64,000 nt of DNA from Convolutriloba macropyga (Eukaryota): the NCBI RefSeq assembly GCF_964194025.1, contig NC_134468.1, positions 78,678,001 to 78,742,000 of the forward strand, read 5' to 3'. Position numbers and translations under genes: made by a program. Shown here piece by piece: positions 23,838-64,000 of this stretch (the stretch's first letter is position 1; every line of letters starts with the position of its first letter). Under the pieces are notes generated by a model. The model was not told the DNA's origin. It saw only the letters and a program-made list of their open reading frames with translations, and did not search any database.

Positions 23838-24494
23838 ATATGAGGGGAACCGTATGGGTGAAGAATAGATAGATCAGTGAATATTAAATTGATATTTTAG
23901 AGTGTAGATTTGGAAAAAATATACCCTCTACTTCCAATTTCCCAAGCAACGACAAGTTCAAAACTGTTTTATTTCAAACTTTTCTCAAAAACGCCTGATT
24001 TTCTATCTTTGGACAAAAAGTTTTCCGTGAACTTTTAAAGAAACAGTATAAAAAGTTAAACATTTTCCATTTAAATTTTCTGTATACTTAAACCGAATGT
24101 GTTTTTTAAATACAAAAATCCGGGCCGAACAGTCTAAAAGTCTTTGAGATGATCTACTTGACTATATGTTGTGAAACTCAATATTTGACAAAAAAACAAA
24201 TAAAACAAATTTTTTGTTTCATATAAAAATCAACAGTTTGAAAACAGCTTGAGTTCGAACGCGCAAACAGTTGCTTCAATCATCATAACATGAAGGAATT
24301 AGACCAATTTAACGCAAACTATCGATGATTTTCCTAAGAGAGTAAGAAAATAGGAAAAAAACTCAGCTTTTTGAGAACATAGTTGGTCTCACTATCCCCC
24401 ATAATCTGTACAACTTTCGGTCTTAACTTTTCACTTGCTAGGCGGTAGATGTTGCTAAACATCATTTTTGTCCTCGATAAATTTGAGAGCTGAG

Positions 24495-30952: not shown

Positions 30953-31907
30953 CCCGGGTCGAGAAAAAATAGGAAAATATGTAAGATAAGCGTTGAAAGG
31001 TTAGTTTTTTCACCGCGAATTTCGTACATAACTTTGCGGTGAAATGCGGTGAATGCGGTGAAATTATGTAAGTTCACCGCTAGAGTAAGCGGTGATCTTA
31101 CAAAAATTCACCACAATTCACCGCTAAATTATCTAAATTTACCGCCCGTACAAGGGTTCGAACCTCTCACCTCCTGCAGGTCATCCACTGCGCCATCTCT
31201 CCTCAAAACTTGCTAGTATTTTGTTTTGAATATAAATCAAATTCACTCTACTTTCTGTAAAACACGCGCGGTAAATTTTTGTAAGATTTGCGATTTTTAG
31301 CGGTGCAATTACATATTTTAGCGGTGAAATGTTGTAATTTTTTGTAATTTCAACGCTTACTCTAACGGTAAAATTACATAAATTCACCGCTTAGAAAAAA
31401 GTGTCAGAAAAATGTAAGGTTAAGGGGTAGTTTTAGTTGGAGGGTAATTCTAACAATTCCTCCCTTACTCCCCATTAATTTCATCGCATTCTTTACTGAT
31501 CTCACACAATTTTAGCAATTTTTTCCAAGCGGTGAATTTATGTAAGTTCACCACTAAGTTGAGCGGAGAATTTATGTAATTTCACCGCATTCACCGCTTA
31601 TCTTACATAATTTGGACACTTTTTTCGAAGCGGTGAATTTATATAATTTCACCGCTAAATTCAGCGGTAAAATTATGTAATTTCACCGCTACCAGGTGAT
31701 AAAGGTTTTTTTCACCGCATTCACCGCTTATCTTACATAATCTGGACACTTTTTTCGAAGCGGTGAATTTATATAATTTCAGTGCTAAATTCAGCGGTGA
31801 AATTATTTAGTTTCACCGCTACCAGGCGATAAAGGTTTTTTCTTCACCGCATTCACCGTTTAACTTACATAATTTCGCGTTGAATGGCGGTGACACCTCG
31901 ACCCGGG
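30953..31907. mobile_element. CACTA/CMC-like MITE, GCGGTGAA subfamily, intact (955 bp)
   Basis: Perfect 11-bp TIR CCCGGGTCGAG/CTCGACCCGGG; AA (or AAA) on both flanks; dense GCGGTGAA repeats; internal ~125-bp tandem duplication 31585-31875. Confidence 0.85.
31143..31195 (-). promoter_or_regulatory. Pol III type-2 A/B-box tRNA-like cassette inside the MITE
   Basis: Minus strand TGGCGCAGTGG (31195-31185), 20 nt, GGTTCGAACCC (31164-31154). Confidence 0.6.
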
Positions 31908-32157
31908 AAATGGTCAGACCAGAGGTCACTTGGGTCTGGCACCTCAACCTGTGTAAGTAGGTGATCATTCAACGAAACCTCAACCTTGGTTTTCATCTTC
32001 TATTTCAGGAAATCTTTTTGCAGCCAGTTTTATTTGCTGATTTCTGTCTTTATTTTAACTCCATTTTGTCATAAAGTTCCTGATTTACCAATAACTACAT
32101 TTTATAGTGTCCGTGGTTGTCGCTATTTTACTTCATCTTCTAAAAGTCTGAGAAATA

Positions 32158-32517
32158 ATGAACAAATTTATTCTTATCGCTACTATCGTTCTCATGGGAT
32201 CCCTTTTGGGTGTTCTGATGTTGTTCGAGGTCCTCACAGTTATCTCCAACGTCCAAACAGTTCAGAGCGCTATCGACTTCCACGATTCAAAGGGAATCCA
32301 AGTTCCCGCTCTGGTATTATTTCACCTGGTCGTGGACGGGTACTCGGTTCCATTTGCCCACCTGTGTCAATGTCACGTGGGCCAATACAGGAACCCAAAT
32401 GTTCACATGCCTTGTCAATGGCTCAATTTCAGGCACCTTTTCAACAATATTATGTACAAGACAATAAATCAAAATAGAACTATCACAAAAAATCAGTTTT
32501 CTGAAATCCGTGGTTAA
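32158..32517 (+). CDS. Possible membrane-protein ORF/exon (N-terminal TM; weak DEG/ENaC-like start)
   Basis: MNKFILIATIVLMGSLLGVLMLFEVLTVI TM, then VQSAIDFHDSKGIQVPALVL; canonical 56-bp GTAAGT..TTTCAG intron upstream (31953-32008). Confidence 0.4.
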   Translation: MNKFILIATIVLMGSLLGVLMLFEVLTVISNVQTVQSAIDFHDSKGIQVPALVLFHLVVDGYSVPFAHLCQCHVGQYRNPNVHMPCQWLNFRHLFNNIMYKTINQNRTITKNQFSEIRG

Positions 32518-34357
32518 AACGAGCATAGTTAACCATTTCCAGACTCTGTCCCCTGATCAGACTACGCCAGTCCAAAATGAGCTCTGATCAGACCTTTGTG
32601 CGGTCCAGGAAATATTCCAATCTTTGAGGCAAAATGTTTGCGTACTTTGATCTTTGATTAGACCTTTGTGCAACAATTCTGCAAATTATCGGACCGAAAT
32701 TATCGTGTAAACTGGCAGTCAGATAACTACAAAAGAGAAGTATTCTTCAATTTTTAAATGATAAAACTTCATCTAGTTATTCACAAATTTCTCTTTTATT
32801 CACAACTTTGGTAATATTTCTAGGCACACATTCTTACAGTTTGTCCTCCATAAGAAGAGCGGGCCATTTGGTCAAATATTTTCCACTCGCATATTATAAT
32901 ATGTAAAAAAGATTCGTAAATTTATGGTGCTCGATTGTGACTTGATCAGAGCTCTGATACAGTACTGATCCAAGACCTGCAATTCCACTGAATCAGTACT
33001 GATTTAGATTGACCTTAGGTCCGGGACGAGACAACAATTTTTTATTTGCATTTTATTATTATTCGTTTTCTTTTTGTCCCATTTTTGCCAGTTGTCATGC
33101 ATTTAGTGACTTTTTGTGCGTTGTTCACCTGTGAAAAGATTCATAAAAAAGTTCAGGCAGCTGAAAAATTTGCGTAAATTTGGTATAATAAAAAATTTAA
33201 GTGAAGTTGAAAAAATGCAATGATTCTAGCCAACCCGGCTTTCTCTATCCAGGGGTGAGACCCAACAGAGGTCCACATATTCTGCATAGTGGGGTATTCC
33301 AGGTNNNNNNNNNNNNNNNNNNNNNNNNNNNNNNNNNNNNNNNNNNNNNNNNNNNNNNNNNNNNNNNNNNNNNNNNNNNNNNNNNNNNNNNNNNNNNNNN
33401 NNNNNNNNNNNNNNNNNNNNNNNNNNNNNNNNNNNNNNNNNNNNNNNNNNNNNNNNNNNNNNNNNNNNNNNNNNNNNNNNNNNNNNNNNNNNNNNNNNNN
33501 NNNNCGGAACATTGGCCCGTTGATTAGTAATTTTTACAGTTTCAAACCAATGGCTATCTTATCATCCATAAAAATAAGACGGCTACCTCAGATGTTTTCA
33601 ATTTCTGTCAGAAAACAATAAAAAACGAATATGGTTTGCAGCCTTGACATTCCAATATGACACTACATCGAAAATATTCTTTTATTGAAGTAGTTGAACA
33701 GTAGTAGAATAATAACATCTGTTGAATAGCAAAATGAAACGAAACTCGCCTTTGAAGAATCGAGGAGTAATTTTAAAATCGCAAGCAAGAATGAAAACAA
33801 TCAAAACTGAAAAAAGTACAATCATACAAAAATAAGAACTAATTTATTTGATTCACTTCTTTTAAAAAAATTACTTTTAAGAAAATCTAATTGCTCTTCT
33901 TTTCGAAAGCATAGTTTTCTTGATGAAAGAAATGAACACGATAGCAACGAAAGGAAATGCTAAACAAATTTGATGATATGGGATTAGGAAAAAGAGAAGG
34001 TGAAAAATACGCATTAGAAAAAGGAAAATATCATCTTATGGGAAAAGGAAATTTGTTCAATGCAAATAGCACGGACCACAAATAACAATTATTCAAAGAG
34101 TGAATAGTTAATGAAACTCAGTTGCAGCCGCAAAATAGCTTCATGTATAAATAGTTCAGTTCAGGCATTGCCTGGTTGTGTTCAAGCCTTTGAGCTTATT
34201 TTGACGGGAAATGATATTTGTCCTGAGTAGCGTTGCTAATATATTTTTATAAAATTGGTTTGTATCAAGAGGTAAAATTAATTGGCAATTAGACTTAAAA
34301 TCCAGCTCAAACTGATGAAAAATGAAATTAGTTAAATGATTTGGAATCTTTGCGATA

Positions 34358-35858
34358 AAATGATGGACCATGATACTCAAACAGATATGTCGAAAGAAAC
34401 CGTTTCACCTACAAAGTCTCTCGAGGTCGCAATACAAATGGAAATGGAGGCACAAAACCAGCAGAAAATAAATCAATATTTGAATATAGCCTCCACTTCG
34501 GTTAATGGTGTCAACAATTTCCAAACCCGCAATCGCAACGCCAATTACGAACCAACTCGTAAAGACTTCACTCGGTACCCAACTGTCCTGCAAAACTACC
34601 AGTATACAAGCATTTGTGCCAACGATGGACTCACAACCAGCGTCAAATTTGCCCTGCGAATGGAAAAAGTGCAATAATTGTGGTATAACCGGACATTTTG
34701 CGAAGAAATGCAGAAAACCGAAAAAACCACAAAGACAGTCATCTAAAACTCCGCAAAGGAATGCTAACCAAATCGACAACTCTTCTGAAACAAGTGATGA
34801 CGAAGAATCAGTCAATTATAGCACGAGCTGTCAACAACTCTATGGTCAAGTCTATGATTCCAACAATAATAGCGATTCCGATGATTATGTGGCTGCCATC
34901 TCATGTGATTCGGCAAACTAATTTGAACCTTTAAATGCTAAGATACAGTTTCGAAAACACAAGCAAACGCAATGATTGATTCTGGAAGTGTAGTCAGTCT
35001 CATCACCAAAACGCTGGAAAACAGAATACTACGAACTACACCATCTGCAAAATGTGTCACTACAAAACAAAACAAGGACTTGAAAACTTTTTCAAACGAG
35101 CCAATTAAATTGCTTATATAACTCGCAACAATAGTGAAATACAATGACTGACATGCAATGACGCTCATATAACAGTTGTGAACGACGGACATAAGATCAT
35201 CATCGGAAAAGACTTTTTCAACAGTCTTGGCCTCGCAGTTGTTCAACAACAAGAAGGAAACGGTAAATGTGTGAATAATATTAACAATTCTACATGTAAA
35301 ATTAAAGACACAATCGCGTAACAATTTCCCCATTTCGTTTCAAGAATTGGCCTTTCAAAGACACATGTAGCGAAATCCAAATTCATCAAAACTTACAGCA
35401 AAGCAACAAAAGGTCAACGCGTTCAAAAAGAATTACAACCTCAGGTCACGGCGGAATTAGATCGTTTAAACACTGAAGGTCAAATCGAAAACTTGTCTAA
35501 TTGTTCGGACGAACATTTCATATCTCCAATCGTCGTTACAGTATAGAAAAATCAATCTATAAAAATAGACTCTAAAGTGTTAAATAAAGCAATACACAAA
35601 AAATATCAAATTCCCAACATAGACAAGTTAATAGATTCAATCTCACAACACCTCACTAACTCTCAAAACGGTCAACAAGTATATTTTTCAACAATAGATC
35701 TCTAATATGCTTATAGTCATTTACAATTACACAAAGGTACTGCAAAATATTGTAACTTCAAAATCATTTGTGGAAAATCCACTGGAAATTATAGATTCAA
35801 AACGGGATTCTACGGCCTCACTGACATGCCGGCTGAATTCCAAAAAGCCATGGATTAT
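34358..35858 (+). pseudogene. Second Ty3/gypsy-family relic, gag 3' half-PR-RT 5' (plus-strand copy)
   Basis: CNNCGITGHFAKKC knuckle, AMIDSGS protease, FISPIVVT, YRFKTGFYGLTDMPAEFQKAMDY. Confidence 0.85.
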
Positions 35859-36049
35859 GTTTTTCAGCAATAGATCTCAATTACGCTTATAGTCATTTAC
35901 AATTACACAAAGATACTGCAAAACCTTGTAATTTAGACATACAAGTTTATAATCATACACTTGTATGTCTACATTACAAGGTTTTGCAGTATCTTTGTGT
36001 AATTGTAAATGACTATAAGCGTAATTGAGATCTATTGCTGAAAAACATA
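35856..36049. repeat. Near-perfect palindrome, 95-bp arms, 4-nt loop
   Basis: 35856-35950 is the reverse complement of 35955-36049 with 2 mismatches. Confidence 0.9.
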
Positions 36050-38310
36050 CTTGTTGACCGTTTTGAGTGTTGGCGAGGTGTTGTGAGATTGAATCTATTA
36101 GCATGTCTATATTGGGCATTTGATATTTGCTTTTGTGTATTGCTTAATTTAACACTTTACTTTCTAATGCCAAATTTATAGATTGATACTTCTTTACTGT
36201 AATGACGATTGGAGATATGAAATGTTCTTCCGAATAACGAGACAACTTTTCGATGTGACCTTCAGTCTTTAAACGATCTAATTCCGCCGTGACCTAGGTT
36301 GTAAATTTATTGGAACACGTCGACCTTTTGGTGCTTTGCTGTAAACTTTTGATGGAACTTGGATTTCGCTACATGTGTCTTTGAAAGGCCAATCCTTTGA
36401 ACCAAAATGGGGAAATTGATCCGCGATTGTGTCTTTAATTTTACATGTAGAATTATTAATATTATTTACACATTTACCGTTTCCTTCTTGTTGTTGAACA
36501 ACTGCGAGGCCAAGACTGTTGAAAATATCTCTTCCGATGATGATCTTATGTCCGTCGTCCACAACTGTTAGATGAGCGTCATTGCTTGTCCAGTCATTGT
36601 ATGTCACCATTGTTGCGAGTTGTTCAAGCACTTTAATTGGCTCATTTGAAAAATTTTTCAAGTGCTTGTTTTGTTTTGTAGTGACCCAATTTGCAGATAG
36701 TGTAGTTCGTAGTATTCAGTTTGCCAGCGTTTTGGTGATGAGACTGACTACAATTCCAGAATCAATCATTGCATTTGCTCGTACATTTCCAAACTGTTTT
36801 CAGCATTTAAAGTTTCCAGTTGGTTTGCCGAATCAAGAGATGGCAGCCACATCATCATCTGGCTCGCTATGAAAATTGGAGTCATAGGCTTGATCATAGA
36901 GTTGTTGATAGCTCGTGATATAATTGACTGATTCTTCGTCATCACTTGTTTCAGAAAAGTTGTCGATTTGGTTAGCAATTGTTTGCGGAGTTTTAGATGA
37001 TTGTCCTTGTGGTGTTTTCGGTTTTCTGCATTTCTTCTCAAATGTCCGGTTATACAACAATTATTGCACATTTTCCATTCGCAGGGCAAATTTGACGCTG
37101 GTTGTGAGTCCATTGTTGGCACAAATGCTTGTATACTGGTAGTTTTGCGGGACAGTTGGGTACCGAGTGAAGTCTTTACGAGTTGGTTCGTAATTCGCGT
37201 TGCGATTGCGGGTTTGGAAATTATTGACACCATTAACCGAATTGGAGGCTATATTCAAATTTTGATTTTTTTTCTGCTGGTTTTGTGCCTCCATTTCCAT
37301 TTGTATTGCGACCTCGAGAGACTTTGTAGGTGAAACGGTTTCTTTAGACATATCTGTTTGAGTATCATGGTCCATCATGTTAAGTATAATTTTGTCTCTG
37401 ATGAGAGTAGTTTCCTAGTCCCCGAGACTGCAGTTTTCCCCCTGTTCGATTAAGCGACCGTAAAAACTTTCAACGGATTCGCCTTTTTGTTGCTTAGATG
37501 ACCAGAATATCAAGCGATTATACGTGATATTCCTAAATTTAGTGAAGGAATCATTCATCGCCTGTCAAAGTTCCTTGGATGGTTCTTTCTCGATTTGGAA
37601 GTGGGGATGTTTACTTTCAAAGATACGACGTCCTTCTGTTCCGATGCTTAAGTAAAGTAGCGATGCAGATTTCTGCTCGCAATTACCCCAAGGGTTAGCT
37701 CCGCACAAAATGCCAATTTCATCAATCTTTTCACATCAATTTTGCCTATTTACCTTTAACTGCTGATTGCGAACTCTTCGGTCCCTTTCTGTTGCTTGTG
37801 TATGGTTCTCCACAGAGTCCTCGTATGTCGGTCTGGGCGGGTATGTTACTGTAGAAGGTTGTCCACTCAACAGGAGTTCAAGTTGAATCCTTTCTTTCGC
37901 CAATAATGCCAACTTCCATTGTTGCGTCCATTTGTCCCACGAAAACGTTGGAGTGACGGTTGTTTTCTCCCAGATTGCGTCAAAGTGAGGGGGAGTCTTT
38001 CTAGACTCACTAACTGACTGCACCATGTTGTACTTGATTACTTTTGCACAAGTCAATCGAGTAGCCAATGCTTTCCAAACAAATTAGCAAAAGCAATTGC
38101 GGTGCGTTTGCTTATTAACTTTCGGTTCTTTGACTTCTCAATTCGCGAAACTAGTATTTGAGGTGCGAATTGTTCAATACCAAATGGAGCAGACTTAATT
38201 GAAAAGCGATTGACTAAGGTTAAATTAGAAATGAACAATAGCAGTGCAAATCGGAGAATGAAATTAAGATTAAGGTAAAACCGAGATTAAAAGGAAGTAA
38301 AATTATTTCA
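35972..38310 (-). pseudogene. Second Ty3/gypsy-family relic, leader-gag-PR-RT 5' (minus-strand copy)
   Basis: gag from ~38025 (MVQSVSESRKTPPHF..WDKWTQQWKLALLAKE), AMIDSGI protease, MPNIDMLID..FSAIDLNYAYSHLQL; no LTR or PBS recognised. Confidence 0.85.
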
Positions 38311-38564
38311 CAGGTTAATCACATATAAGGAAGTGCTCAAGAAATGTTTACATGCGTGATCAGACAGTTTCCTATCTAGGATATGAACAGACATTAGAAT
38401 ATGTATGAAGAACTGAAAAAAAAATAACTAAATGGAAGCACCTGTCCTTCAAATGATGAACATGAACTAGAATACGGTAATGGATATTCTGAAAGCAATA
38501 TCCATCCCGTATGACAAAACTCATAGAAATTTTGCTTCTGTTCCCTTGTTCCTCTCAGCCGCCG

Positions 38565-41500
38565 ATGAGTGAAAGTAAACAAAATAACACTGAAGAAGAC
38601 TACAGGAATTTTGTGATGTCACTTAGTAAAACTTTTCCGCCGGCTACTTGGCCGCTCTATACTTTACGGTAACTCTTGAATATTGAAAGGCTTATCGCGG
38701 TAAATTTAACCAGGAGTTCGCGCGCTTTTTGGTCGCAAAGTTTATCACCTAATTCTATTATCACCCCGACACAATTTGTACAAGTGTAAAACATTTTAAG
38801 GATAGGCAGTAAATTTTTAAACTAAGAAAAACAGAGCATAGTGCAGACAAGAGATATGGGTTCCTTGTTTGATTTTTTCTGTTAATATTTAAATGAATTT
38901 GCAATAAATTGCATTAATTCACTTTCATGCAAGAATCTAGCAAGGATCTAGCAAGACTTGGTGTCCCTAATCGGTGCTTTGAAAACCTGTTTAAACACGT
39001 GGGCTTAATTAAATTATTGGGTTAAACTTGAAAGGTTTTGAATTGGGATCTTATTTTTCCTAGCATTTTTTGAACGCTCCCGATACCCTTATCATAGAAT
39101 TAGAACACAATTTTCAATGTGTCCCCGATAGAAATTAGTGATGATGCGTCATTACAACGCAGAGGTATAAACCAAAATTTATGACCCAATAGTAAAACTG
39201 CCCCGAAAATTAGATACATAGAATGAACGAAACTAGGACACATCTTTTGTATCTTAGTTTTCGCAAAAGGGGTTCCACCAATTTTGCGAAATAAAAGAAC
39301 ATTGGGAACGAAAAGTAGGTTAAAAGTTTTGTAGCGTTTTTCCGCTCAATTTAGGTATCTATTATTCGCGCGCATTTTGAGCATGCAATAAGCACTTTAA
39401 TAAAGATTTAATTGAAGCTTTCAAAGCTTTAATGTGCTTTAAACACATGCAACCACAAAAATTAATTTTTTTTGGAAAAATTCCTCGCTTATCAAAGGCT
39501 TTGTATATCAATATGGGACAGGCCGATTTCAATAAGTAGTAATAAATTGTACTAATAAGTAGTAATAAGTAGTAATAAAGTACTATGAGTAGTAATAAAG
39601 TACTACTAGTAGTAATATGTTAGGCTTAATTATATAAGTAGTAATTAAGTTAGGCTTAATTGCGGATTATATGCGAAATCAAGCTTCATTGCGTGCGAAA
39701 AATTGATACATAAATGGAGCAGATGCGTGATACAAGCCGTGCGAAAAATAGGTTTTAAATTTTGTACTTGTTATTCGCGGCTAGGATTAGGACACTTTTG
39801 CAAACACGGGTTGCTAATTTGCCTTCCATTTTGCTGGTTTCTGCTAAAGTAGCTATTTTCCGCAGTAGGGTTCCATTTTCATTGTATTAACGTAGTAAAA
39901 ACGAACACGAGATACACGCATCGGGCTTATCTGCCCGTGACGATTTCGGTATACCTCTGCGTCGTTATGTTGAAAAAATCAACCCAAGCCGGATCATATT
40001 GCAAGATTTCTGCAATATTTGATTCAGCTCATCACTAGATTTAACAGGAAATCAAAACTTTAGTTGCCGATTGATATAATAGCTGATTTGTATTTTCATA
40101 TTTGTCTCGATCTGTCTCTATCTTCTAAGATTTTTCTGAGATTTGAGTTCTCTCCATCACTAGGGTATCATTACTATGTGATCGACTGAACAGCAAGTTT
40201 AGCCTCCATTTCCGGGGGGAACAAGAGTTTTTTTCATAATCTATAAAACTGATGCATTATGTCTGACTTAACAATGGGCCATAATTAACAATTCATTGTC
40301 TGTAATGTATAAAACTAGCTAGCCGTAGCCACAAATCGATACAATATTCAATTTCACATTCTCAATTAGTCATTTAATTGTTTCGTGGAAACATAACTCA
40401 TAAAAAGATCAACATTGAATTCAATTATTAACAATAATTTGGTCTTCAAATTCTATATCGATCTCTCCAGTGCAACTTGATTGAAGTTTAATTCGAATTG
40501 TATTGGAAAAACTCGCGACTGATGTTTTCATTGTTAAAATTTGCCAATTTGATTTATGAGGTTCGTTCATGTATAATTTGGGTAATTTAACCTGATTTGG
40601 ACCAATATCTGGTATGATGTGTAGGAAGGAACTGGATCAGAAGTTGATTTGGCAGAAATATGGCTACCTGTTCAAAGTACCAGCCTACACTGATTCCCAC
40701 CTGAGGAGGAGTGCAATTGACAAGTTCAGAAGAAACGACGAGAAGAGACAGTATGCTAAAGATACCCAAATCTACTCAAATTTAGGTTACTAACTTTCTT
40801 TAAAATTGCTCATCTCACTGAAATTTAAGACTTGCTCAGAATTGGTTATCATCACAATTTCGCCCGTTCAAAATTTGGAGTTGTTTTGAACGCACTTCAC
40901 ACCCCCCCCCCTCCCGTTGCTACAGGTTGCGAACTTTCTTCATTTCCACACTAAAATTTGAAAGCGATCATACTTTGGCTCGTTCAAGATTGGTTAGGAT
41001 CACAGTTGGTTTGAAACATGGTAATAATTTAAATTGATTGAACATTTCTATTCAATATATCACCAAAATTTTTTAACGAAATCTCAATCACCTCGAAACT
41101 GACAAAACATGCTAAAAAATTGTCATTGCGTTATTAAATAAACAAGGCGGCTCGTTAATGTGCGTTCGCACATGATGTTCCGACCCGAGCCCATCTGCAT
41201 GTTTGGCTTAACTGTCAACCAAATGAAGAGATAAAAAAATAGATGTTTGAGTTTTAAAAAATTGTTACAAAACCTAAAAACTAATGGAATTACATAATGC
41301 CCTGCCTTATTACAGCGCTCACGAGATCTGCCAATAAAAAGACTACGGGAAAAAACAACAAACAGCAAAATAAGCAAAAACAAAAATTTCACGGCACAAA
41401 ACCATTATATAAATTTAAAAGCACTCAGTAACAACGTCAAAATGCAATCAGATAAAACCTTAACAACACAAATTTAGTGTTTCCTAACTATACAGCAGAT

Positions 41501-47500: not shown

Positions 47501-49330
47501 TAACTTTTAACATATAACATTTTTGTTCTTGTTCTTACAAGATACTTCTTAAGTGAACAAATTTTTGTCTTAAGTTCTCTTAGAAAGCCAATTTCTGTGA
47601 ACAAATTCATCAGGTGCCTTCCTATAGCGTAGCCAGTTGTTGATTACCTGCAAAAAATATGTCTGATATCAAGCCGAAATGAGTCTTGAAAAAGTTATTC
47701 CAAAAGGCGATTCCAAAAGCGTATGCCTTCAATTTACTAGCGGCTCTGAGCTACCGTTCTTCTATTCATACAATCTATCTAGCACCTAAACGAATAGCGT
47801 TTAAAAACAAATTGACCAAGATTTTGCGAAAGAAAAACGCTTGATTAATAGTGTCTTGATTAATTAACCGCGAGGATAATGGTAGCGTGGTTGAGCTGCT
47901 ACAAGAAATTTCTTAGAAGAGATTGATTTTCTATCATATACTCATAATGTGTGTCGGTCAATTCAGCTTTTTTGTTCCTTCAACTCTGCTCGGGCTTCCA
48001 AGTTTTCTAAACCTCGTAACTTTTTTTAACATTAAAATTCTATTAGGCACATTTATTCAATATAACAATAATTGGGATTTGAAGTATTTACCGCTTTAGA
48101 ACCAAACAAACTTTTATATTTTGCTTGACCTTACTCCTTAACAAAAACATATGCAGCATTCAAGTTTCTCTGCTGCTCAGACACCTTCGAAAAAATCACC
48201 GCTATTTAGCGTAAAGAAATATAATTGTGTGGCCTATATTTAAATACCGTTACGCGGGTGTTTACATGGTTGAGTTACAGTGGGCTTCTTCGTACGGCCA
48301 TGTTTCAGTAAATTATTACCTCTAAAAATGGCTAACCAGGATTCCTGAATTTTTGGTTATTTGGAGTTATGTTCTTTTTTGACTAAATATCATTTTCTCA
48401 GAAGTCGCTACTAGTTGTTACTTCATTGGAAATTTATTTCAATGGATTGTAATTTAGATTCTGTCCTGATATTTTTACAACCCATCGAATTTGGATTATT
48501 TTGTTGCTCTGCTTTTTTTGTAAGGCCTGTTCATTTGGTTTCGACTTATTGACGTCAATGAGAAGGCAAAATTTTTCTTGATAATTTTCTTTTTTTAGTG
48601 AAATTTTGTTGAGCTTCCCAGTAGAACAAATTTAGAGTCATTGCAGGTTTTCAGTTAATAGCTGTTTTTATAAATTTTTTGCTTTGTAGTCTCAAAATAA
48701 TAGTGAATTGGTTAGTCTTGCCCCTATTTTTGTTGTTTTCGTTGTCTTATTGCTTTTTCTGGATAACGACAAATCACAATGACCTTCCAATGAGACATCA
48801 ACAGACCTATTCAATGTTTACAGTTGAGAACCTTTAATCTTTATTACTTTATCACTGTGTATTCACCTGAAATAACAATTAATTTTGAGTTTTGTCCGAT
48901 AATATTTTTCTTTTTGATCAGTTCATTTTCAGATCAGATCAACGTCACCTGATACATTCCTGTCCTTCTTTTAGAGTCCATCAAGTTTCAAATTACAAAG
49001 CATGAAATATTCTTTTATAATTTGAATGTTTCCCATTCCTGCCTCGTTTGCTCCACAAGAAAGCTAAAAGTTAGGATGAGCGCGCTTCGAACATTATGTG
49101 TTAACCCACATTAGAAAACCTCCTTATTCGGTGTAAAATAATTTTTAGACTATAAACTCCACGAAGAGAAGGCCAGTTTGGAAAAGAGAGACGAGTGGCA
49201 GGCGAGGTCAACCCAGCCTGGAGTTCACGAGAGAAACACCAAACTGCGCTGGAAAAAAGCTGTCAAGACAATCAAGGTCGACTCTTACAACATCGGCAAA
49301 AGTGAAATTAGAGAGTTTCTGCGAGGATGA
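38565..49330 (+). CDS. Predicted spliced host gene, ~233 aa, unknown function (exons 38559-38668, 40625-40750, 44812-44974, 45444-45570, 49149-49330)
   Basis: All introns GT-AG with matching phases 2,2,0,1; no internal stops; ends REFLRG*; upstream 50-bp intron 38509-38558; start codon uncertain. Confidence 0.65.
39150..39969. mobile_element. MITE-like segment with 20-bp TIRs containing an AATAAGTAGT minisatellite (39530-39660)
   Basis: CATTACAACGCAGAGGTATA vs TATACCTCTGCGTCGTTATG (18/20 complementary); no TSD seen. Confidence 0.5.
41141..44512 (-). mobile_element. HINE H3 (intronic)
   Basis: AACAAGGCGGCTCG..ATGTGCGTTCGCACAT..TGTTCCGACCC at 41141; GGGTCGGAACA at 44500-44510; internal diverged tandem repeats. 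Confidence 0.8.
45833..46623. mobile_element. Possible CCC..GGG-type MITE with ATCATATATGATCC subterminal repeats
   Basis: CCTGGGTCGC.. and ..GCGAACAGGG ends; GATCCTTGTATGA repeats near both ends; 22-bp perfect inverted pair ~45847-45868 and 45909-45930. Confidence 0.45.
49074..49129 (+). mobile_element. Degenerate HINE 3' end (H4)
   Basis: GGATGAGCG..CGAACATTATGTG..CACATTA..CCTCCTTATT, homologous to 16256-16310. Confidence 0.5.
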
Positions 49331-50055
49331 AGCTAATACTATTTCACTTTCCGTTTTCGCTGTTATTGAAAGTAGTTCATAATTCATTTATTTTCTGTAA
49401 CTCAATCTGTAGCTGTTCTTAAAAATAGAAATTTGATTACTCCGTTATTGTTAGCTATGAAGACAAAAATAGAACTGACCTCTGATAGAAATCGATGTTC
49501 CTGCCAGGATTGCTGCGTCCGGAATTACGTGCGTTCCTTATTTTCATGTGATTAGACTTTTGTGTATATCTGAACGGAACGCGGCAGAATGATCCGATTG
49601 CACACTAAATTTTTCTGAACAACTGACTCTTTTTATACGGGTACCAATAGAACAGACCGCATAAATTTGCCATTTCGAGCAAACTTGCTCAATATCATAA
49701 CTGAAATCCATTTTAGGTAATAATTTTGGTTCCTGCGTAATCGCAGCGGAACAGCATTAGGCCACAGCGGCCTGTTCTCAGCTGTCCTTTTTCTTATTAT
49801 TCCCCACATTTCAGACTGATCTTTTTATGAGCAGAATTGCTCTTTTTTGGCGACTATGGCCTCTTTTTTTGCATCTGAAACTTCCACGCGGTACCATAAT
49901 TGCAGTCAACATTGGTCAGGCTATGGTCAACCTGAAGTAAACATGGCTTCTTAACTCTGTTAAAACCCTCATTTTCTTCTAGACTAGTACTGTGAAATTT
50001 ATGGTTCCTGTTCTAATTTGTGACGTATCAGACCATGTAAACCTTGAGGCAGAAT

Positions 50056-50385
50056 CTCGGGTCGAGTTTTTCAGTGAAATAATGTAAGATTTTTGGTGAA
50101 AAAAAATGTTTATTACTCCAAAGCGTCGGCTTTTTTGGCGGCGAATTTTAGTAAGATTTGTGCTTTTCGATGATTAAAGTATGTAAGAATTGCTGCTTTT
50201 AGCGGTGAAAATTGATTTTGTAACAAATTCAGAGCAATTTCTACAAAAATGAACTCCGCGCAACAATTCAAATATTAGCATACCATTTCTTGTTGTAATG
50301 AAAAAAAACTCATTCCAATTCGCGGCGAATCTTTAAGAGTTTAATGTTTGTAAAATTAGCGTTTTTGGTGGTAAAATTTATAGTA
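50056..50385. mobile_element. Degenerate GCGGTGAA-family MITE left part
   Basis: CTCGGGTCGAG followed by (G)CGGTGAA and TGTAAGA motifs. Confidence 0.5.
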
Positions 50386-53300
50386 AACGAGGTAACATAA
50401 ATATTGCATATATCGTTATGACCACACTGCAAACTTGAAGTTTGGCTGATGGATTAAGCATCGGAAAACTAAACAAACTTTTTGAGGACTTTATGCTTAT
50501 GATCAGTTTTTAGTCATTTCAAGCAAAAAAAAACATAAATAGGGTATTTCAAAGATCAATCAATATTCAATTTTTCGTCTCAACTAAGATCTCTGATCTG
50601 CTTTTTTCATGACGACAATCTTGTTAAGTTTTTGCAGCATTGTTGTAGACCATAGCACAAGCAATCCAAAATGAGTTATTTAAGAAGATAATTGTGCAAC
50701 TAAAACCCAGTTTTGGAAATAAATTGTCTGGCAATAGCAAAAATGTGAGTACTCCGCAATCTAATTCATTACTTAATCAGTGTATGTTATTTCTTCTTCC
50801 CGAAATTATGTTTATAACACTTTTTGGAATTTACAGTCTGTGACTGATATGACTCATTCGAGCATGAGTTCTCAATTTGAACGCAAATGAATGTAGTTCA
50901 ACTGGACATAAGTGCTCTCCGACTGCCCTTCAACATAGCTTTGGTTATTACCGAATGCCATTTATCTTTACAGCATCAATTAAACAAAGTGCTTGATCTG
51001 AGCAGAATAGCTCCCTGCTAAATTTTTTCTTCTTTCAATACAAAATCTTGCTAGAAAACTTTGCTAACTTATGCTACATCATGCTGCAAACAAACAAAGA
51101 AATCGTTCAAGAACCCAATTTCATATGGGTTTCAACTGAATAATCAACCAATTAAAGTAATTGAACTTTTTCTGTTTTTTAATTTGAAAGTAGCATGACA
51201 CTTCTGAAATGTAGTTCCACGTACTGTGGTGATGCAGGTGATGCCGCGCTATCTCCCGAGATAATTGCAGCCAAATTCCATCATGGACTAGCCCAACAAT
51301 GTCCATCATTAGTCCAAGTGGAAGTTTTATGCTCATAATTGTTCTTGAAAGGCAGCGACTGTTTCGAAGCGTACATTTGAGCCCTGGCCATGACTTATAT
51401 CCAGACTTTCATAAATTGTGACAATTACTAACAGAAAATCTCATAGAAAACAAAAAGACATAGGAACTGCCAAATTGAATAAGATAAAGAGCTTTTGAGC
51501 TAAAAAAACGTAATGAATACAAAATTAAACAAATGAAGGTACCTAAAAGAGCGTTTCGTAACATTCGCTGCCTTCTGCGAACAATTATGAGCTTATACCG
51601 TCCACAACATGGACTAAAATGAGTGGGCTAGTTCCTGATGGCGGCATATGGCGCTGTATAACCTGCGTCAACTAGGATAATTTTAAAATGCATTGAGGGA
51701 TAGCCACAATAAAGAGGACTTGCCCAATGGCACAATTCCCATTGCCCAAGGCTAAGCTAGCATTCAACTAAATTTTAATAAACTTGACGTTCACAACATG
51801 AACAGGGTGCGAGGTTCTCACAGTAGAATGACTGGGTTTCGAGCTCAATTCAAACGAAAAATCCTGGTTGAGAACTATATCGGTAGACTTATTCGAGTGC
51901 CCGGCCATTTTAATCATGCCATATGAGTATTTCGAATTTTTCTTCTCGCCATTTATGTACACTGTGTACAATTGTTGAAGTGTGTGCAGACAAAGCGCAT
52001 TGATCCAATACTAATGCTCATTGTAATTGCTGTCGGTATTTGTTATGCGGATGATGTGCGGAGAAGCTTTGACTATTTTTATCTTCAGTTAGCCTGGTTC
52101 AGCTGTTTTTGTACGCCAAATTAATGTTCCAGTGCTGTGTTTTTCTGCAACAAAAGTACGGGTAGTAGTTGCTTATAGTACAAGAAGAAACGGTAGTTGT
52201 AAAGAAAATGCATAATTATTTTGCAGGAAAAACTTTGATCTCTTGAATTTTTACTAGAGAAATCTATATGTGAATTTAAACAGTTTCCTCTCTATTTTTG
52301 GTTAGAAACAAAAACAAGACATCCTTTTTTAAATTTAACAGATTGTTACCAATTGGCGTTTTAGTTGATCCCAGGAATTTCTCAATCGTAATTTTTTGTG
52401 CTATAGTGCCACTATTGGCCGCGTTTCAACTCTAGTCAGCTTTCTGGAGAATACTATAGTCCGAGCCATTGTTGCATACTTTTGACATTGTGGGCCGAAT
52501 AAAAATTATTGCATTGAGCCCCCCTTTGTAGCATTTGTTATTAAAACTAAATTCTTAGAAGTCTTCTGTTTGCAGTAATTCAACCTGCGTTTTTTAAGTA
52601 TTTTGCTTGCTTTTACAGCATCACAAAAAAGAACTCTCTAGGGTTAGGACTGATATGATGTTTTCCGCCATTTTTTTCCGAAATAATTAGGGAAATTTTT
52701 TACAGAACAGCATAAGGCCATCTACTGACCATTCAAGGCAAAAACTTTTTTCGCCAACTCATCGAAAAATGCCTAAGTTAATGATAAAATTAGGGGAGTC
52801 TAAGCAGTACCAACTACTGCAAAAACTGACCAGAAAAATTTTTGCGATCTTTGCGGGAGAAAGAATAATCTTTGCAATCAACTATTTTCAGTCATTGCTG
52901 ATTATATTATGATAGTATCTTCTATACTAAGCACGCTTTGAATCAATGATGAATCAAGAGCCAGTGATATTTAAAACAAACAATTTTTGCCATGAAACAC
53001 TAAAACTATTCTTACCTTGTCAAGGTGTTCTCCAGGAGATAGAAATTTGTTTTTGAACAGTTTTTTTTTCTTGAAGCGAAGGAGGGCCTAGTTCTTTTAA
53101 CAAGTCATAGCAATCAAGACGTACTTGTATTTCATTTCTTTTTGCGGCTGTGTAGACAGCATAACTTGCTTGTTTCTCTCGCTCGGAAACCAGAGAATAT
53201 GAAGCAATGGGTTGGAACCATCTCTCTTACATGGAACCCGAGTGCGTTAACCATTACAACAACTGTTTTTCTTAAGCCCGCCCACAATGGGCTTTTGTCA

Positions 53301-53932
53301 TAATTTACTCTCTTGTTCTCTCTTCCAGGCTCTTTTTTCTCTAGCCAAGCATTCGTTGATCAAGTAGAGCTTATCGTGAAGCTATATAGAGCTTAAATTT
53401 TCCCCAATTTTCATCAGATTTTTTTCTCTCAACCTTTAATAGATCAAACAAAGATCACAGAGATGACGCCAAGATTATTTGAACGTACTTTTCTCAGACC
53501 CCGTGTGAGGAGTTTGGCACAGCTAATAGAGTCTATTCTAATGCTCTTAATTTAAACGCCAATTAAGAGAAAAAATTTTGAAATTAAATGATTAATAATG
53601 ACAATATTGCTAAAAATTAATAGTATTAAAAACTCTCACTTGTAGCAACTTATGATTTTTAAGATTATTTGTCATAGCTTATCTCATCATTAGGTTAAAT
53701 CTCCGACATATTTTTGAACGCAAAGCGAAAATTCTGAGAACACACGAGAGGCCAAATGACTTTCGAAATTTTAATATGCTAATTTAAATGTCATTGGTTT
53801 CTTCTTTGTTATACATTTCTATTCAATTTATCTGCATGTTTTAAAATTGAAATTTGGCCTCCAGTATTTTTCCGTTATTTTTAGAACATTTGAAACGGTG
53901 TCAACTTTATAACACGTGTTCTTGCTTGTATA

Positions 53933-54086
53933 TATAGTCAGTCCCATAAAGTTGCAACGCTATCGAACGTTTCAATGGTCAAAGTTCAAATTTAAAACAT
54001 GGTGATATCTAGCAAAACACTGCCCATTTGCATGCCCGAGCTTTTCGAACGTTCGCCTGCGTTGCAACTTTATGGGACTTAGTATA
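53933..54086. mobile_element. Short Tc1/mariner-like MITE
   Basis: 21-bp perfect TIR core AGTCCCATAAAGTTGCAACGC (53940-53960, 54059-54079), TA-flanked. Confidence 0.75.
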
Positions 54087-54307
54087 GTATAAGTGCCCCA
54101 AAAACCACTCAAATCCTGACATCAACCACGTCTTTTTTTATTATAGACCCCCCCCCCCCCCCCAACCCCTACGAAATAATAGCCTGCTCATTAATCTTGT
54201 TATAATGTTATATTTTTACTTCGGAAATTGAGGGGGGCGTCATATGACTATGACCACTATACTGGGGGGGGGGGGAGCTATGATGATAAAGACCCCCTAA
54301 CTGAGTT

Positions 54308-57300
54308 TTAATAAAGAACGTCTTCGGTTGCCCTTCGTCTCTCAACCCTCACAGGGCGCAAATCTTCCTCCCCTCCTGCAACCTCGGGTGACCTCTGCTC
54401 GTAGCGATGTGTTGATGATGATGAAAATGCAGACTCGGGTGTGAACTGGAATGTAGACATTGAAGTGAAGAGAGAGTGGTGTGCATTGATGTATTTGAGG
54501 CAAGATTCAAGCAGAATTTCAGTCATGTCCAGACAATGTTCCAGGGCCTAAAAAGGGTCGAACGGATCTCACAAACCTTGCGAATTAAAACTGAAATTTT
54601 GCAATCTTTAATTGAAAGAATTTCAGGAGTCTAGTGCCATATGCTATAGAAGTTTGTAGAAATAGTTAAATAGTCAGCCCAGAAGGGAACTTTTTAATTT
54701 CCGCCAGCAACGAGAATCTTCCCCGGGTCGAGAAAATTTATGGAAGAAATGCGCTGAAATGCACTGATTTTTCAAAAAGTTCAGCGCAAAAAACACATAA
54801 AAATGCGCTGAAATGTGCTGAAATGCGCTGAAACTTTGCAAGAAACGCGCTGAAAACCGCTGAGTTTTCAAAAATAGCTATAACTGAGAATCGAACCCTG
54901 CTCTCCGGTTCGGCAGCCTTCACCCAATCCACTGCGCCAAAGATTCCTGACCTTCATACTATTTATTTTAATTTTATATTAATAGACAGTTTAAGAAGAA
55001 ATGCGCTGAAATTATGTAAGAAATGCGCAGAAAATTCAGCGCAGTTCTTACATATTTTCAGAGCTTTTCAGCGCTTTTTTAAGAAAAAGTTAATTGTTAT
55101 ATAAGAAAAACTAAATTGTTCGAAATTGAGGAAACGTTGTCAAAAAGCGTTTAAATCCACTAAATAATTTAAAGAAATGCGCTGAAATTTGACTACATTT
55201 CTTATGTAAGATTTTTGCGCTGAAAATTTTGAAAAATCAGCGCGTGTCAGCTCATTTCAGCGCATTCAGCTCATTTCTTACATAATTTTAGCACATTCAG
55301 CGCACTTCTTACAAAATAACGCGCTGAAACGGCGCTGACATCTCGACCCGGGTCCTAAGATTGTTTGAACAAACGATTGCATAANNNNNNNNNNNNNNNN
55401 NNNNNNNNNNNNNNNNNNNNNNNNNNNNNNNNNNNNNNNNNNNNNNNNNNNNNNNNNNNNNNNNNNNNNNNNNNNNNNNNNNNNNNNNNNNNNNNNNNNN
55501 NNNNNNNNNNNNNNNNNNNNNNNNNNNNNNNNNNNNNNNNNNNNNNNNNNNNNNNNNNNNNNNNNNNNNNNNNNNNNNNNNNNNNNNNNNNNNNNNNNNN
55601 NNNNNNNNNNNNNNNNNNNNNNNNNNNNNNNNNNNNNNNNNNNNNNNNNNNNNNNNNNNNNNNNNNNNNNNNNNNNNNNNNTAATTGAAAAGTCCCCTAA
55701 TTGTTGCCTAGGCGAATGAAATCGAATATAACAAGCATAGATGGTGAAATTCTATTGGTGGAAAGGTAGCAGTTACCCAGAAAGAATTAATTCAGACAAT
55801 TCATTTGATTAAATAACATCATGAACAAAACCACCCTTCACCAAACTTACAGGTTCCAGACATCTCTCACGCCATGACTTCATTTTTGTCATTCCTCCTT
55901 CTCTCTTAAGCACATGCTAATACAATAAATTAAAGGCAAACATGCTGGAAACCTTTTGAATTTGTCAATGTACAAACGACAGAACAATTCGAAACATTTT
56001 AAAAACCTTAACATTTTCTTTATAATACAACTAATAGGAAGAATTTTTTAGGTTTTTAATTGTTGCACATTGCTTGTCGTTTTCCTTCAATAATAAATGA
56101 TAAATGCAATATGGGTCCTTTCAACGATTTTTGTAAGTATTTTTGGAGCCGAAAAAATCAGCTTCTTTTTTGACAAAGATGAAGATTTTGCTCTGCTAAA
56201 AAACCGTAATTTATGAAATAATGTTTCTTAAATCCCAAGGCAGAGCCAATCAGCGCTGAGTCAGTCTAGAGATATTTTGTTTTTTAGGATGACCAGTACT
56301 CTGTTCATGTCACAAACCTCCGGGTTATAAATTCTGTGCACATTAAATTTTAAAAAAAAACAGAAGATAGTCTCTATTCTACGCTGAACTTGAGTGCGTG
56401 TGTTTTATTGAACAAAAACGGCAACCTAGTGTTCATACAAAGCTGCATGCCGAGGAGGAGAGGGGTTGAAACACATATAGCTTTCAACAATTGAAACTCT
56501 GGGTACAGAAATTGGGATTCTATGTCAACTTTTTGTCTTTATAATCTCCACCAAAAAGTTTTGGCAAAACTCTTTAACACTTGTTCTTTAAAGGCATATA
56601 TACATTACTAAGACCGATTTTTCGAAATATGTGTGATCGTTTTATTATTAATAGGAAATCAACAGAATCACATGTACGTATTTTTTGCAGACAAAAATCA
56701 ATGCTTTTCAACGATAAACAAATTTCTAAAGACACGTTACCGTTCAGCTATCTAAGGCAGAACTATTAATAGTATTTAGAAATTTTGTCAAGGTCATACA
56801 AGGTCACTGGTATGACCTTGACCCTTCATTTGCGCTTTGATTTAAGCTTAAGACGCAGAACGATTTTATTTTTCAACAAACTATTTGTTTTCATTGTTTT
56901 CAGTACTCCTTCACTTACAGATAAATTGTTTTTGTTGACAGTTTTTTCAAACTGTGTCATGTCGCGTCCACATGCGCACACATATTGTCTTCCCTCGACG
57001 TCTGTTTCTTCCCATGACTCATCGTAAGAGTCGTCGTCATTTCGTCTGGTCACGTGGTGTTCACACATTCTGTGTCTCCCTGCCGAGAAAGGAACTACAT
57101 CCCTCCCCAATGTGGGGCAGAGATCAGATCTGCCTTTGGGTACCACGGGATCTTTAGAAGGACCACTGAAACATTTGGAATCACTGTATAGTTATTATGC
57201 AATATGTTTCAACTAAAGATTAAGAATTGTTGAAAACTAAGAATTAGGAATCCTTGGGCACTAAGAAATGAGAATTGTTCAAAGCAAAGGATTGGGAATT

Positions 57301-63530: not shown

Positions 63531-64000
63531 CTCGGGTCGAGGTGTCAGCGCCATTCAACGCAAAATTATATAAGATAAGCAGTGAATGCGAACATTTTTG
63601 TAAGATAAGCGGTGAATGCAGTGAAAATACATAAATCAAGCGGTGAATGCGGTGAAAAACCTTTATCGCCAGGTAGCGGTGAAACTAAATATATTCACCG
63701 CTTCAATCAAAAAAGTGTCCAAATTATGTAGGATAAGCGGTGAATGCGGTGAACTTACATAAGTTCACCGCTTAGAAAAACTGTTTAATTGTGTGAGATC
63801 AGCAAAGAATGTGGTGAAATTAATGGGGAGTAAGGGAAGAATTGTTATATTTACCTTTCCACTAAATCTACCCCTTAATTTTACATCGCTTTGACACATT
63901 TTTCTAAGCGGTGATTTTATGTAAACTCGCACCAATAGAGTAAGTGATGAACTTCTCGCAAATCTTACAAAAATCCACCGCGCATGTTTTACAGAAAGTA
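63531..64000 (-). mobile_element. GCGGTGAA-subfamily MITE, inverted relative to 30953-31907, runs off the window
   Basis: CTCGGGTCGAGGTGTCA.. is colinear with the reverse complement of ~31250-31907. Confidence 0.85.

What the first reader, a model, noticed from the sequence alone, without database searches (positions are those of the whole stretch)
30953..55352. DNA-transposon MITEs carrying an internal Pol III tRNA-like cassette
Seen: both intact CCCGGGTCGAG MITEs have, ~150-240 bp from the left end on the minus strand, an identical A box (TGGCGCAGTGG) and a B box (GGTTCGA-ACCC/TTCT) with unrelated spacers (20 vs 31 nt). A decayed copy is at 17750-17805, and T-run terminators follow in two copies. 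Inference: box conservation despite spacer turnover suggests a function such as a small Pol III RNA or TFIIIC recruitment as a barrier to silencing, making these MITE-SINE hybrids.
Basis: partly seen in the sequence, partly recalled or inferred. Interest (0 to 1): 0.7.

Follow-up and report, generated by a model that had tools for sequence, protein, structure and literature searches.

The report
Jumping genes carrying a tRNA-type promoter
Two small cut-and-paste transposons of the acoel worm Convolutriloba macropyga each carry an inherited, decayed tRNA-gene remnant. It still has the full layout of an RNA polymerase III promoter, which is odd for elements that need no RNA copy to move, but nothing yet shows that it is used.

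Summary
E1 (30953-31907) and E2 (54722-55352) are MITEs with CCCGGGTCGAG ends and 2-bp target duplications. Both carry TGGCGCAGTGG and GGTTCGA on the minus strand, about 170-240 bp from the left end.

Corrections:
- E1's 20-nt spacer is a private 12-bp deletion. Its family consensus has 32 nt, against 31 in E2's family, and the spacers are distantly homologous.
- No variant scores as a tRNA.
- Nothing marks a nested SINE.

New here:
- The module is an inherited part of at least six MITE families with this end, and also sits in a Helentron-like element.
- There are 946 exact A-to-B matches genome-wide and none in the reversed control.
- Across families a TATA-like hexamer lies exactly 38 nt upstream of the A box. 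TATA, A and B columns are 77-83% identical, against 36-39% for the rest.
- Within families the boxes decay like any other base.
- A young subfamily spread with a non-canonical B box, and a cassette-less derivative also spread.

This pattern suggests the promoter was retained in source elements, not host exaptation. Function (TFIIIC/Pol III recruitment) is inferred; no RNA data exist. The scan noted the same phenomenon before on other DNA of this genome (s1-258992, s1-234623).

The parts
30953..31907 (.). E1: family-1 MITE, 955 bp. Its subterminal motif is GCGGTGAA. It carries an extra tandem duplication of about 120 bp near the right end, which canonical copies of about 894 bp lack.
   Evidence: It is 90% identical to the family consensus. 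Thirty genomic copies were aligned.
30951..30952 (.). E1 target-site duplication AA. The second copy is at 31908-31909.
   Evidence: In family 1, 17 of 17 copies with exact termini have identical 2-bp flanks.
31230..31235 (-). E1 TATA-like hexamer TTATAT. It lies 40 nt upstream of the A box, against 38 in the family consensus; E1 has a 2-nt insertion.
31185..31195 (-). E1 A box TGGCGCAGTGG.
31154..31164 (-). E1 B box GGTTCGAACCC. The A-B spacer is only 20 nt because of a private 12-bp deletion, and no T4+ run follows within 50 nt. This copy's unit is probably dead.
31055..31390 (.). A 91-nt inverted repeat made of subterminal-motif arrays (arms 31055-31145 and 31300-31390) that brackets the E1 cassette.
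   Evidence: I11; cross-matches of query positions 103-193 and 348-438.
54722..55352 (.). E2: family-2 MITE, 631 bp (canonical copies about 665 bp). Its subterminal motif is GCGCTGAA. The target duplication TC lies at 54720-54721 and 55353-55354.
   Evidence: It is 91% identical to the family consensus. In family 2, 19 of 19 copies have 2-bp duplications.
54972..54977 (-). E2 TATA-like hexamer ATAAAA, exactly 38 nt upstream of the A box.
54929..54939 (-). E2 A box TGGCGCAGTGG.
54887..54897 (-). E2 B box GGTTCGATTCT, 31 nt after the A box.
54870..54874 (-). E2 T5 run, 16 nt after GGTTCGA (T6 in the family consensus). It is a candidate Pol III terminator, but T5+ runs occur about once per 80 nt on this strand.
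17551..17990 (.). Decayed copy of a related family ('family 7'). Its left end is CCCGGGTCAAA. The cassette remnant on the minus strand at about 17759-17826 has a broken A box and is followed by T6. The right limit is approximate.
23569..23838 (.). Cassette-less palindromic mini-derivative of the family-2 left arm. It is itself a dispersed family.
   Evidence: One search finds at least 30 near-full-length copies at 81-91% identity on many chromosomes.
63531..64000 (.). Family-1-like copy in reverse orientation, 76% identical to the consensus and cut by the window end before its cassette.
50056..50400 (.). Old one-ended fragment of a related element (its end reads CTCGGGTCGAG). No cassette is visible.

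Best explanation
E1 and E2 are non-autonomous cut-and-paste transposons (MITEs) of two sister families. Both have 11-15-bp CCCGGGTCGAG inverted ends, 2-bp target duplications of any sequence, and arrays of an 8-mer subterminal motif.

Each family consensus holds, at the same place and polarity, a module of about 130 bp that descends from a tRNA gene or tRNA-like Pol III gene. The module no longer folds or scores as a tRNA. It still has the complete layout of a TATA-assisted type-2 Pol III gene:
- a TATA-like hexamer 38 nt before the A box;
- the A box;
- a 31-32 nt spacer;
- the B box;
- a T-run 16-30 nt later.

The module is inherited vertically with the transposon, not inserted copy by copy. 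It is shared by at least six MITE families with this end.

Because the promoter parts stay intact between families while the rest of the module diverges, I infer that source elements with a working promoter left more descendants. The module would then bind TFIIIC/TFIIIB and perhaps make an RNA of about 85-100 nt. That could help the element, for instance by keeping its transposase-binding arrays in open chromatin or by blocking the spread of silencing.

Individual insertions then decay neutrally. E1's unit is already dead (20-nt spacer, no terminator). E2's is largely intact.

Shown: the structure, the inheritance and the conservation pattern. Inferred: factor binding, transcription and any benefit to the element.
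For: - Structure and 2-bp duplications: (17/17 and 19/19 copies).
- The module is present in every sampled family-1 copy and nearly every family-2 copy, at one position.
- There are 946 exact A-box/20-45 nt/B-box matches in the genome and 0 in the reversed control.
- Further carriers in the held loci are families 3, 4 and 5, with GCGGTGAA or GCGTTGAA motifs and the same ends, plus a Helentron-like element.
- In the cross-family alignment, promoter columns have pairwise identity of 0.77 (seven lineages) and 0.83 (four deep lineages), against 0.39 and 0.36 elsewhere.
- The TATA-like hexamer lies exactly at -38 in families 1, 2, 3 and 5 and in the Helentron-like element. The background rate is 0.5% per position, and this motif played no part in finding the copies.
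- Searches anchored outside the boxes show that the majority A box and B box are canonical in further families.
- T5-T7 runs follow the B box in six of seven lineages.
Against: - Within families the boxes are no better kept than other 11-mers, so there is no selection on individual insertions.
- A young family-1 subfamily spread with GGTTCGG in about 93 of 100 listed copies and no T5 run nearby.
- A cassette-less derivative of family 2 also spread. The module is therefore not needed for transposition.
- The single copies of families 3-5 were found through near-intact boxes, which inflates box identity. The TATA result and searches are free of this bias.
- T-runs are common in these elements, about one T5+ per 80 nt, and overlap the elements' own TTTTTGTAAGA repeat unit.
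- No RNA run exists to show a transcript.
- The spacer core GGAGGTCAG is also well conserved, so not only the canonical promoter parts are kept.
Confidence: 0.5

Rival explanations
1. Neutral relic. One ancestral MITE picked up a tRNA gene or SINE head once. All families inherited it, and it does nothing. The better-kept boxes reflect shared ancestry, alignment and ascertainment effects, or some constraint unrelated to Pol III.
For: - Copies decay at the same rate inside and outside the boxes.
- A subfamily with a non-canonical B box and no nearby terminator spread.
- A cassette-less derivative spread.
- Families 1, 3, 4 and 7 are close enough that their whole cassette aligns.
Against: Between the deep lineages (family 2, family 5, Helentron-like, family 3 group) the non-promoter columns are only about 36% identical. 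The A box is 91% and the B box 83% identical, and the TATA-like hexamer keeps its exact -38 position. That contrast is hard to obtain by drift alone.
Confidence: 0.3
2. Repeated capture. Different families independently picked up host tRNA genes with their upstream regions, by gap-repair template switching or transduplication. A and B boxes and TATA spacing look conserved because all host tRNA genes share them, without any selection inside the transposon.
For: - The spacers of family 2, family 5 and the Helentron-like element differ strongly from the family 1/3 group.
- Family 5 still shows a 6/7-paired acceptor-like stem by eye.
Against: - All cassettes share the same 31-32 nt spacer length and the GGAG(G)T.AG core.
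- The cloverleaf stems are gone in every family consensus while the promoter parts are not. That still requires differential decay after capture.
- Repeated capture at the same place would itself need an explanation.
Confidence: 0.1
3. Nested SINE. The cassette is an independent tRNA-derived SINE that retroposed into individual MITE copies or into the founders.
For: There is precedent for SINE pieces inside MITEs (MER6, PMC6887750). tRNA-like cassettes are reported by other first readers in several transposon classes of this genome.
Against: - The unit has no tail, no poly-A and no duplication around it.
- It sits at the same position in all copies of a family.
- No free-standing copy was seen in about 290 kb of held sequence. 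Every real cassette lay inside a CCCGGG-ended MITE or a Helentron-like element.
- The conserved -38 TATA-like element lies upstream of any Pol III start, so RNA cannot carry it.
Confidence: 0.05

Closest known systems
TRIMp3 elements: Cassandra, Helenus, Ajax (PMC10886601)
   Same: [quoted passage not shown] Only the Pol III promoter parts of that sequence are kept, and it no longer encodes a functional tRNA or 5S RNA. Function is argued there too from conservation of the promoter motifs.
   Different: Those are LTR retrotransposons, where the Pol III transcript is the template for reverse transcription. The elements here are cut-and-paste DNA transposons, which need no RNA copy. That paper does not mention DNA transposons.
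MER6/MER6A, a mariner-derived MITE carrying a V-SINE body (PMC6887750)
   Same: A MITE that spread a SINE-derived segment as a passenger.
   Different: MER6 carries the SINE body and tail but lacks the tRNA-related head, so it has no promoter. Here it is the reverse: only the promoter-bearing part is present, with no SINE body or tail.
tRNA-derived SINE heads (SINE2)
   Same: A and B boxes at tRNA-like spacing in a decayed tRNA-like sequence present in many copies.
   Different: There is no LINE-derived tail and no retroposition-type duplication. Mobility is by inverted ends with a 2-bp duplication. The unit also includes a conserved upstream TATA-like element that a retroposed RNA could not carry.
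CMC (Chapaev-Mirage-CACTA) MITEs with 2-bp duplications (PMC6004678, PMC4079192)
   Same: Short inverted ends, a 2-bp duplication and arrays of subterminal motifs. CACTA-type transposase genes (PF02992) with open frames up to 1073 aa are present in this genome.
   Different: The termini are CCC...GGG, not the CAC...GTG described as invariable for Chapaev and CACTA. The link to a transposase was not tested here. From my own knowledge, ISL2EU is another superfamily with 2-bp duplications.
Extra-TFIIIC sites and insulator SINEs such as mouse B2 and MIR (from my own knowledge; not checked in papers here)
   Same: B-box-bearing repeats that bind TFIIIC and act as chromatin boundaries. This is the mechanism proposed for the module.
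   Different: In those cases the host exploits retroposon copies. Here the pattern points to a benefit for the transposon lineage itself, and no binding data exist.

Membership tests
MITE (non-autonomous cut-and-paste transposon) | Terminal inverted repeats | tested here: met
   CCCGGGTCGAG at both ends of E1, E2 and about 58 genomic copies.
MITE (non-autonomous cut-and-paste transposon) | Target-site duplication of fixed length | tested here: met
   The 2-bp flanks are identical in 17/17 and 19/19 copies. The 3-bp flanks are identical in 1/17 and 0/19.
MITE (non-autonomous cut-and-paste transposon) | Small, non-coding, many copies | tested here: met
   Sizes are 631-955 bp, with no ORF of 180 aa or more inside. 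There are hundreds to thousands of first-look candidates. k-mer depth in the element is 10^3-10^4 times that of the flanks.
CMC / Mirage-CACTA-like superfamily | 2-4 bp duplication (2 bp in Mirage and some CACTA) | tested here: met
   PMC6004678.
CMC / Mirage-CACTA-like superfamily | 5'-CAC...GTG-3' termini | tested here: not met
   The termini are CCC...GGG. The hallmark is quoted from PMC4079192.
CMC / Mirage-CACTA-like superfamily | Autonomous partner with a CMC DDE transposase and the same ends | not tested
   PF02992 genes exist in the genome. The link rests only on an earlier unverified note (s1-229323).
tRNA gene | Cloverleaf that scores with a tRNA model | tested here: not met
   ARAGORN finds 0 genes in the window and in 9 loci. 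Rfam gives no tRNA match at E up to 10 on E1 or E2, or at E up to 0.05 on four other carriers.
SINE | [quoted passage not shown] | tested here: met
   A and B boxes at 31-32 nt spacing in the family consensuses.
SINE | LINE-related or A-rich tail, and its own duplication from retroposition | tested here: not met
   The unit is bounded directly by transposon subterminal repeats, with no tail and no flanking duplication.
Type-2 Pol III transcription unit | A box, B box about 30-60 nt apart, then a T-run | tested here: met
   Met for E2 and for the consensus of families 2, 3, 4 and 5. Not met for E1 (20-nt spacer, no T4+ within 50 nt). It is weakened in the young family-1 subfamily (GGTTCGG).
Type-2 Pol III transcription unit | Transcribed by Pol III and bound by TFIIIC | not testable with these tools
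   No RNA run is on record. All four holders are DNA contig sets.

The most novel reading that the evidence does not exclude
In this acoel, cut-and-paste DNA transposons, and apparently Helentron-like elements too, keep a complete, portable tRNA-type Pol III promoter under selection at the level of the transposon lineage. The promoter consists of a TATA at -38, an A box, a B box and a terminator. It would be a self-carried TFIIIC/TFIIIB landing pad that keeps the element accessible or shields it from silencing, or it would make a small RNA. That would be a strategy not described for DNA transposons.
Probability: 0.4. Interest if true: 0.8.

Novelty: new variant of a known kind. Interest (0 to 1): 0.6.

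Why it matters
Pol III promoters are known in mobile elements that move through RNA (SINEs, Cassandra/Helenus-type TRIMs), where the transcript is the thing that transposes. A cut-and-paste transposon gains nothing obvious from making a small RNA.

A promoter kept intact across diverged MITE families therefore points to another use. The likeliest is chromatin: TFIIIC sites act as boundaries and nucleosome-free regions. If that is confirmed, transposons here would carry their own anti-silencing device, and the idea would be testable in a genome with thousands of natural replicates. Some of those replicates have broken promoters, namely E1, the GGTTCGG subfamily and the cassette-less derivative.

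The finding also matters for annotation. These units will be miscalled as SINEs or tRNA pseudogenes.

Tried and rejected
1. I converted its stated distance into C1:17478001-17517000 and fetched 39 kb. The stretch has no CCCGGGTC end, no GCGGTGAA-type motifs and no long inverted ends. It encodes pPolB, an A32-like ATPase and an rve integrase, so it is Polinton/Maverick-like. The coordinates were wrong for my purpose. I did not try another route.
2. RNA evidence: no RNA run holds the elements. The one read-laying run shows only that E1's left junction is present in all four DNA runs (two samples) and that the element is highly repeated. No empty-site joint was listed.
3. The tRNA and Rfam scans were all negative. 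The microRNA-family hits are hairpins formed by the subterminal repeats and lie far below the gathering scores.
4. Within-family conservation of the boxes shows no excess.
5. I rejected the T-run as strong evidence on its own, because T5+ runs are frequent and are part of the TTTTTGTAAGA repeat unit.
6. My first reading that E1's GGTTCGA was a private change was wrong. It is shared by an older subfamily (L003, L009, L018, L025) and by about 7% of strict family-1 copies, so it is probably the ancestral state.
7. ORFs in the held loci include no transposase-sized frame next to the MITEs.
Full report
**Organism.** The window is C1:78678001-78742000 of a 1,175,981,408-base assembly. That length equals the 1,175.98 Mb reported for the chromosomal assembly of the acoel Convolutriloba macropyga (PMC13650328). 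Window G+C is 35%.

**The observation.** CCCGGGTCGAG occurs 6 times at up to 1 mismatch, against 0.07 expected. It delimits E1 (30953-31907) and E2 (54722-55352). TGGCGCAGTGG lies on the minus strand at 31185-31195 and 54929-54939. GGTTCGAACCC lies at 31154-31164 and GGTTCGATTCT at 54887-54897, giving spacers of 20 and 31 nt.

The copy at 17.7 kb is a decayed element of a related family. It starts at 17551 and its A box is broken. T-runs follow the B box in E2 (T5) and in the 17.7-kb copy (T6), but not in E1.

The assembly gaps at 33305-33504 and 55385-55681 lie outside both elements and their duplications. Nothing here depends on them, and I did not look up their letters.

**What the elements are.** Whole-genome DNA searches returned hundreds of matches for each element. 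I aligned 30 and 28 copies.
- Every copy with exact termini has identical 2-bp flanks of varied sequence: 17/17 and 19/19. The 3-bp flanks agree in only 1/17 and 0/19.
- The bodies are arrays of an 8-mer, GCGGTGAA in family 1 and GCGCTGAA in family 2, each next to a TTACAT/ATGTAAG unit. A third variant, GCGTTGAA, occurs in another family.
- Canonical copies are about 894 and 665 bp. E1 has an extra tandem duplication of about 120 bp near its right end.
- E1 and E2 are each about 90-91% identical to their consensus.
- In short-read contig sets of two samples, E1's left junction is present in all four runs. k-mer depth inside the element is 10^3-10^4 times that of the flanks.

A 2-bp duplication with subterminal repeats fits the Mirage/CACTA side of the CMC superfamily (PMC6004678). 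CACTA-type transposase genes with open frames up to 1073 aa exist in the genome. However, the ends are CCC...GGG, not the CAC...GTG hallmark, and I could not link them to a transposase.

**The cassette is part of the families, and it is not a tRNA.** All 30 family-1 copies and nearly all 28 family-2 copies carry it at one position and polarity. ARAGORN finds no tRNA in the window or in nine loci. Rfam gives no tRNA match even at E up to 10. Transposon repeats bound the unit directly, with no tail and no duplication of its own.

- E1's 20-nt spacer comes from a 12-bp deletion that the other 29 copies lack, so the family spacer is 32 nt.
- The spacers of the families are distantly homologous. 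They have the same length and share a GGAG(G)T.AG core before the B box.
- The young family-1 subfamily has GGTTCGG in about 93 of 100 listed copies. E1 keeps GGTTCGA together with an older subfamily.

**How widespread the module is.** The pattern A box, 20-45 nt, GGTTCGA has 946 exact matches in the genome and none in the reversed control. In the roughly 290 kb I held, every real cassette outside families 1 and 2 lay in one of two contexts:
- another MITE with the same kind of end: family 3 in L026 and L034, family 4 in L039, family 5 in L024 and L047;
- a Helentron-like element: L030 and L062.

No free SINE-like copy appeared.

**Conservation tests.** Within families, the boxes are no better kept than other 11-mers (40th-68th percentile).

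Between families the picture differs:

| Columns | Seven lineages | Four deep lineages |
|---|---|---|
| TATA, A box and B box | 0.77 | 0.83 |
| Rest of the module | 0.39 | 0.36 |

A TATA-like hexamer ([AT]TA[AT]A[AT]) sits exactly 38 nt before the A box in families 1, 2, 3 and 5 and in the Helentron-like element. Its background frequency in these elements is 0.5% per position. This motif played no part in finding the copies.

The single copies of families 3-5 were found through near-intact boxes, which biases the box figures. Two searches anchored outside the boxes show that canonical A and B boxes are the majority state in further families. T5-T7 runs follow the B box in six of seven lineages. 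However, T-runs are common here and overlap the elements' own TTTTTGTAAGA unit.

From established knowledge of Pol III genes, which I did not check in papers here, a TATA about 20-30 nt before the start site, an A box, a B box 30-60 nt later and a T-run form a complete TATA-assisted type-2 unit. The upstream TATA cannot be carried by a retroposed RNA. That argues against a SINE origin for each family.

**Interpretation.** The contrast between neutral decay in copies and retention of promoter parts between lineages is what one expects if source elements with an intact promoter leave more descendants. I therefore favour a functional TFIIIC/TFIIIB/Pol III module that benefits the transposon (confidence about 0.5).

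The benefit is not essential. The GGTTCGG subfamily spread, and so did a cassette-less palindromic derivative of the family-2 arm, seen at 23569-23838 with at least 30 dispersed near-full-length copies.

The rivals are a neutral relic (0.3), repeated capture of host tRNA genes (0.1) and a nested SINE (0.05). No RNA data exist.

**Known relatives.**
- The nearest described analogues are TRIMp3 elements (Cassandra, Helenus, Ajax; PMC10886601). There a Pol III promoter makes the RNA template of an LTR retroelement.
- MER6 is a MITE carrying a SINE body without its head (PMC6887750).
- My full-text searches found no description of cut-and-paste transposons that keep a Pol III promoter. That is not proof of absence.
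- The scan had already flagged the same phenomenon elsewhere in this genome (s1-258992, s1-234623, and Helentron and LTR cases). I treated those notes as leads and re-derived the points above from sequence.

**Limits.**
- The parent-element test failed.
- The family consensuses rest on the 28-30 best-scoring copies.
- The lineages in the cross-family test are not phylogenetically independent.

Noticed in passing
window 1769-9337: Pieces of an LTR retrotransposon: a PNMA-like gag ORF (1769-2686), integrase zinc-binding and C-terminal domains (4625-5473, 5621-6631), and two ORFs without Pfam hits (7875-9337). It is interrupted by the N gap at 6705-6912.
   Followed up: partly
window 34356-37382: A large near-perfect palindrome of about 3 kb. 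The outer arms of 343 nt are 97% complementary, with nested arms down to a 4-nt centre near 35952. It looks like a foldback-type element or an assembly of inverted copies.
   Followed up: no
L061-L064 (G000:C1:17478001-17517000): Fetched by mistake. It encodes a protein-primed type-B DNA polymerase with an endonuclease VII-like part, a poxvirus A32-like packaging ATPase and an rve integrase, so it is a Polinton/Maverick-like element. I only observed it.
   Followed up: partly
window 23569-23838; G000:C8:36626857-36630018: A 270-bp palindromic mini-MITE made of two family-2 left arms, without the cassette, is itself a dispersed family. On chromosome 8 its arm forms a tandem, satellite-like array of about 3 kb with a period of roughly 98 bp.
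   Followed up: partly
L024:330-1010 and L047:330-1110: A further MITE family with the same kind of end (…CCTCGGCCCGGG) uses a third subterminal motif, GCGTTGAA. The families therefore differ by one base at the same motif position (G, C or T).
   Followed up: partly
L030:2086-3336 and L062:2525-3775: A non-TIR, Helentron-like repeat with short palindromes carries a related cassette: TAGCGCAGTGG, 33 nt, GGTTCGAATCC, then T5-T7. Its TATA-like hexamer sits at the same -38 position.
   Followed up: partly
window 31055-31145 and 31300-31390: The E1 cassette sits in the 154-nt loop between two 91-nt inverted arrays of subterminal motifs. The same arrangement is seen in all family-1 copies, as cross-matches of positions 103-193 and 348-438.
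   Followed up: no
G000, many chromosomes: At least 73 matches to the CACTA-type transposase domain PF02992, many inside uninterrupted frames of 900-1073 aa. This suggests recently active autonomous CMC elements.
   Followed up: no
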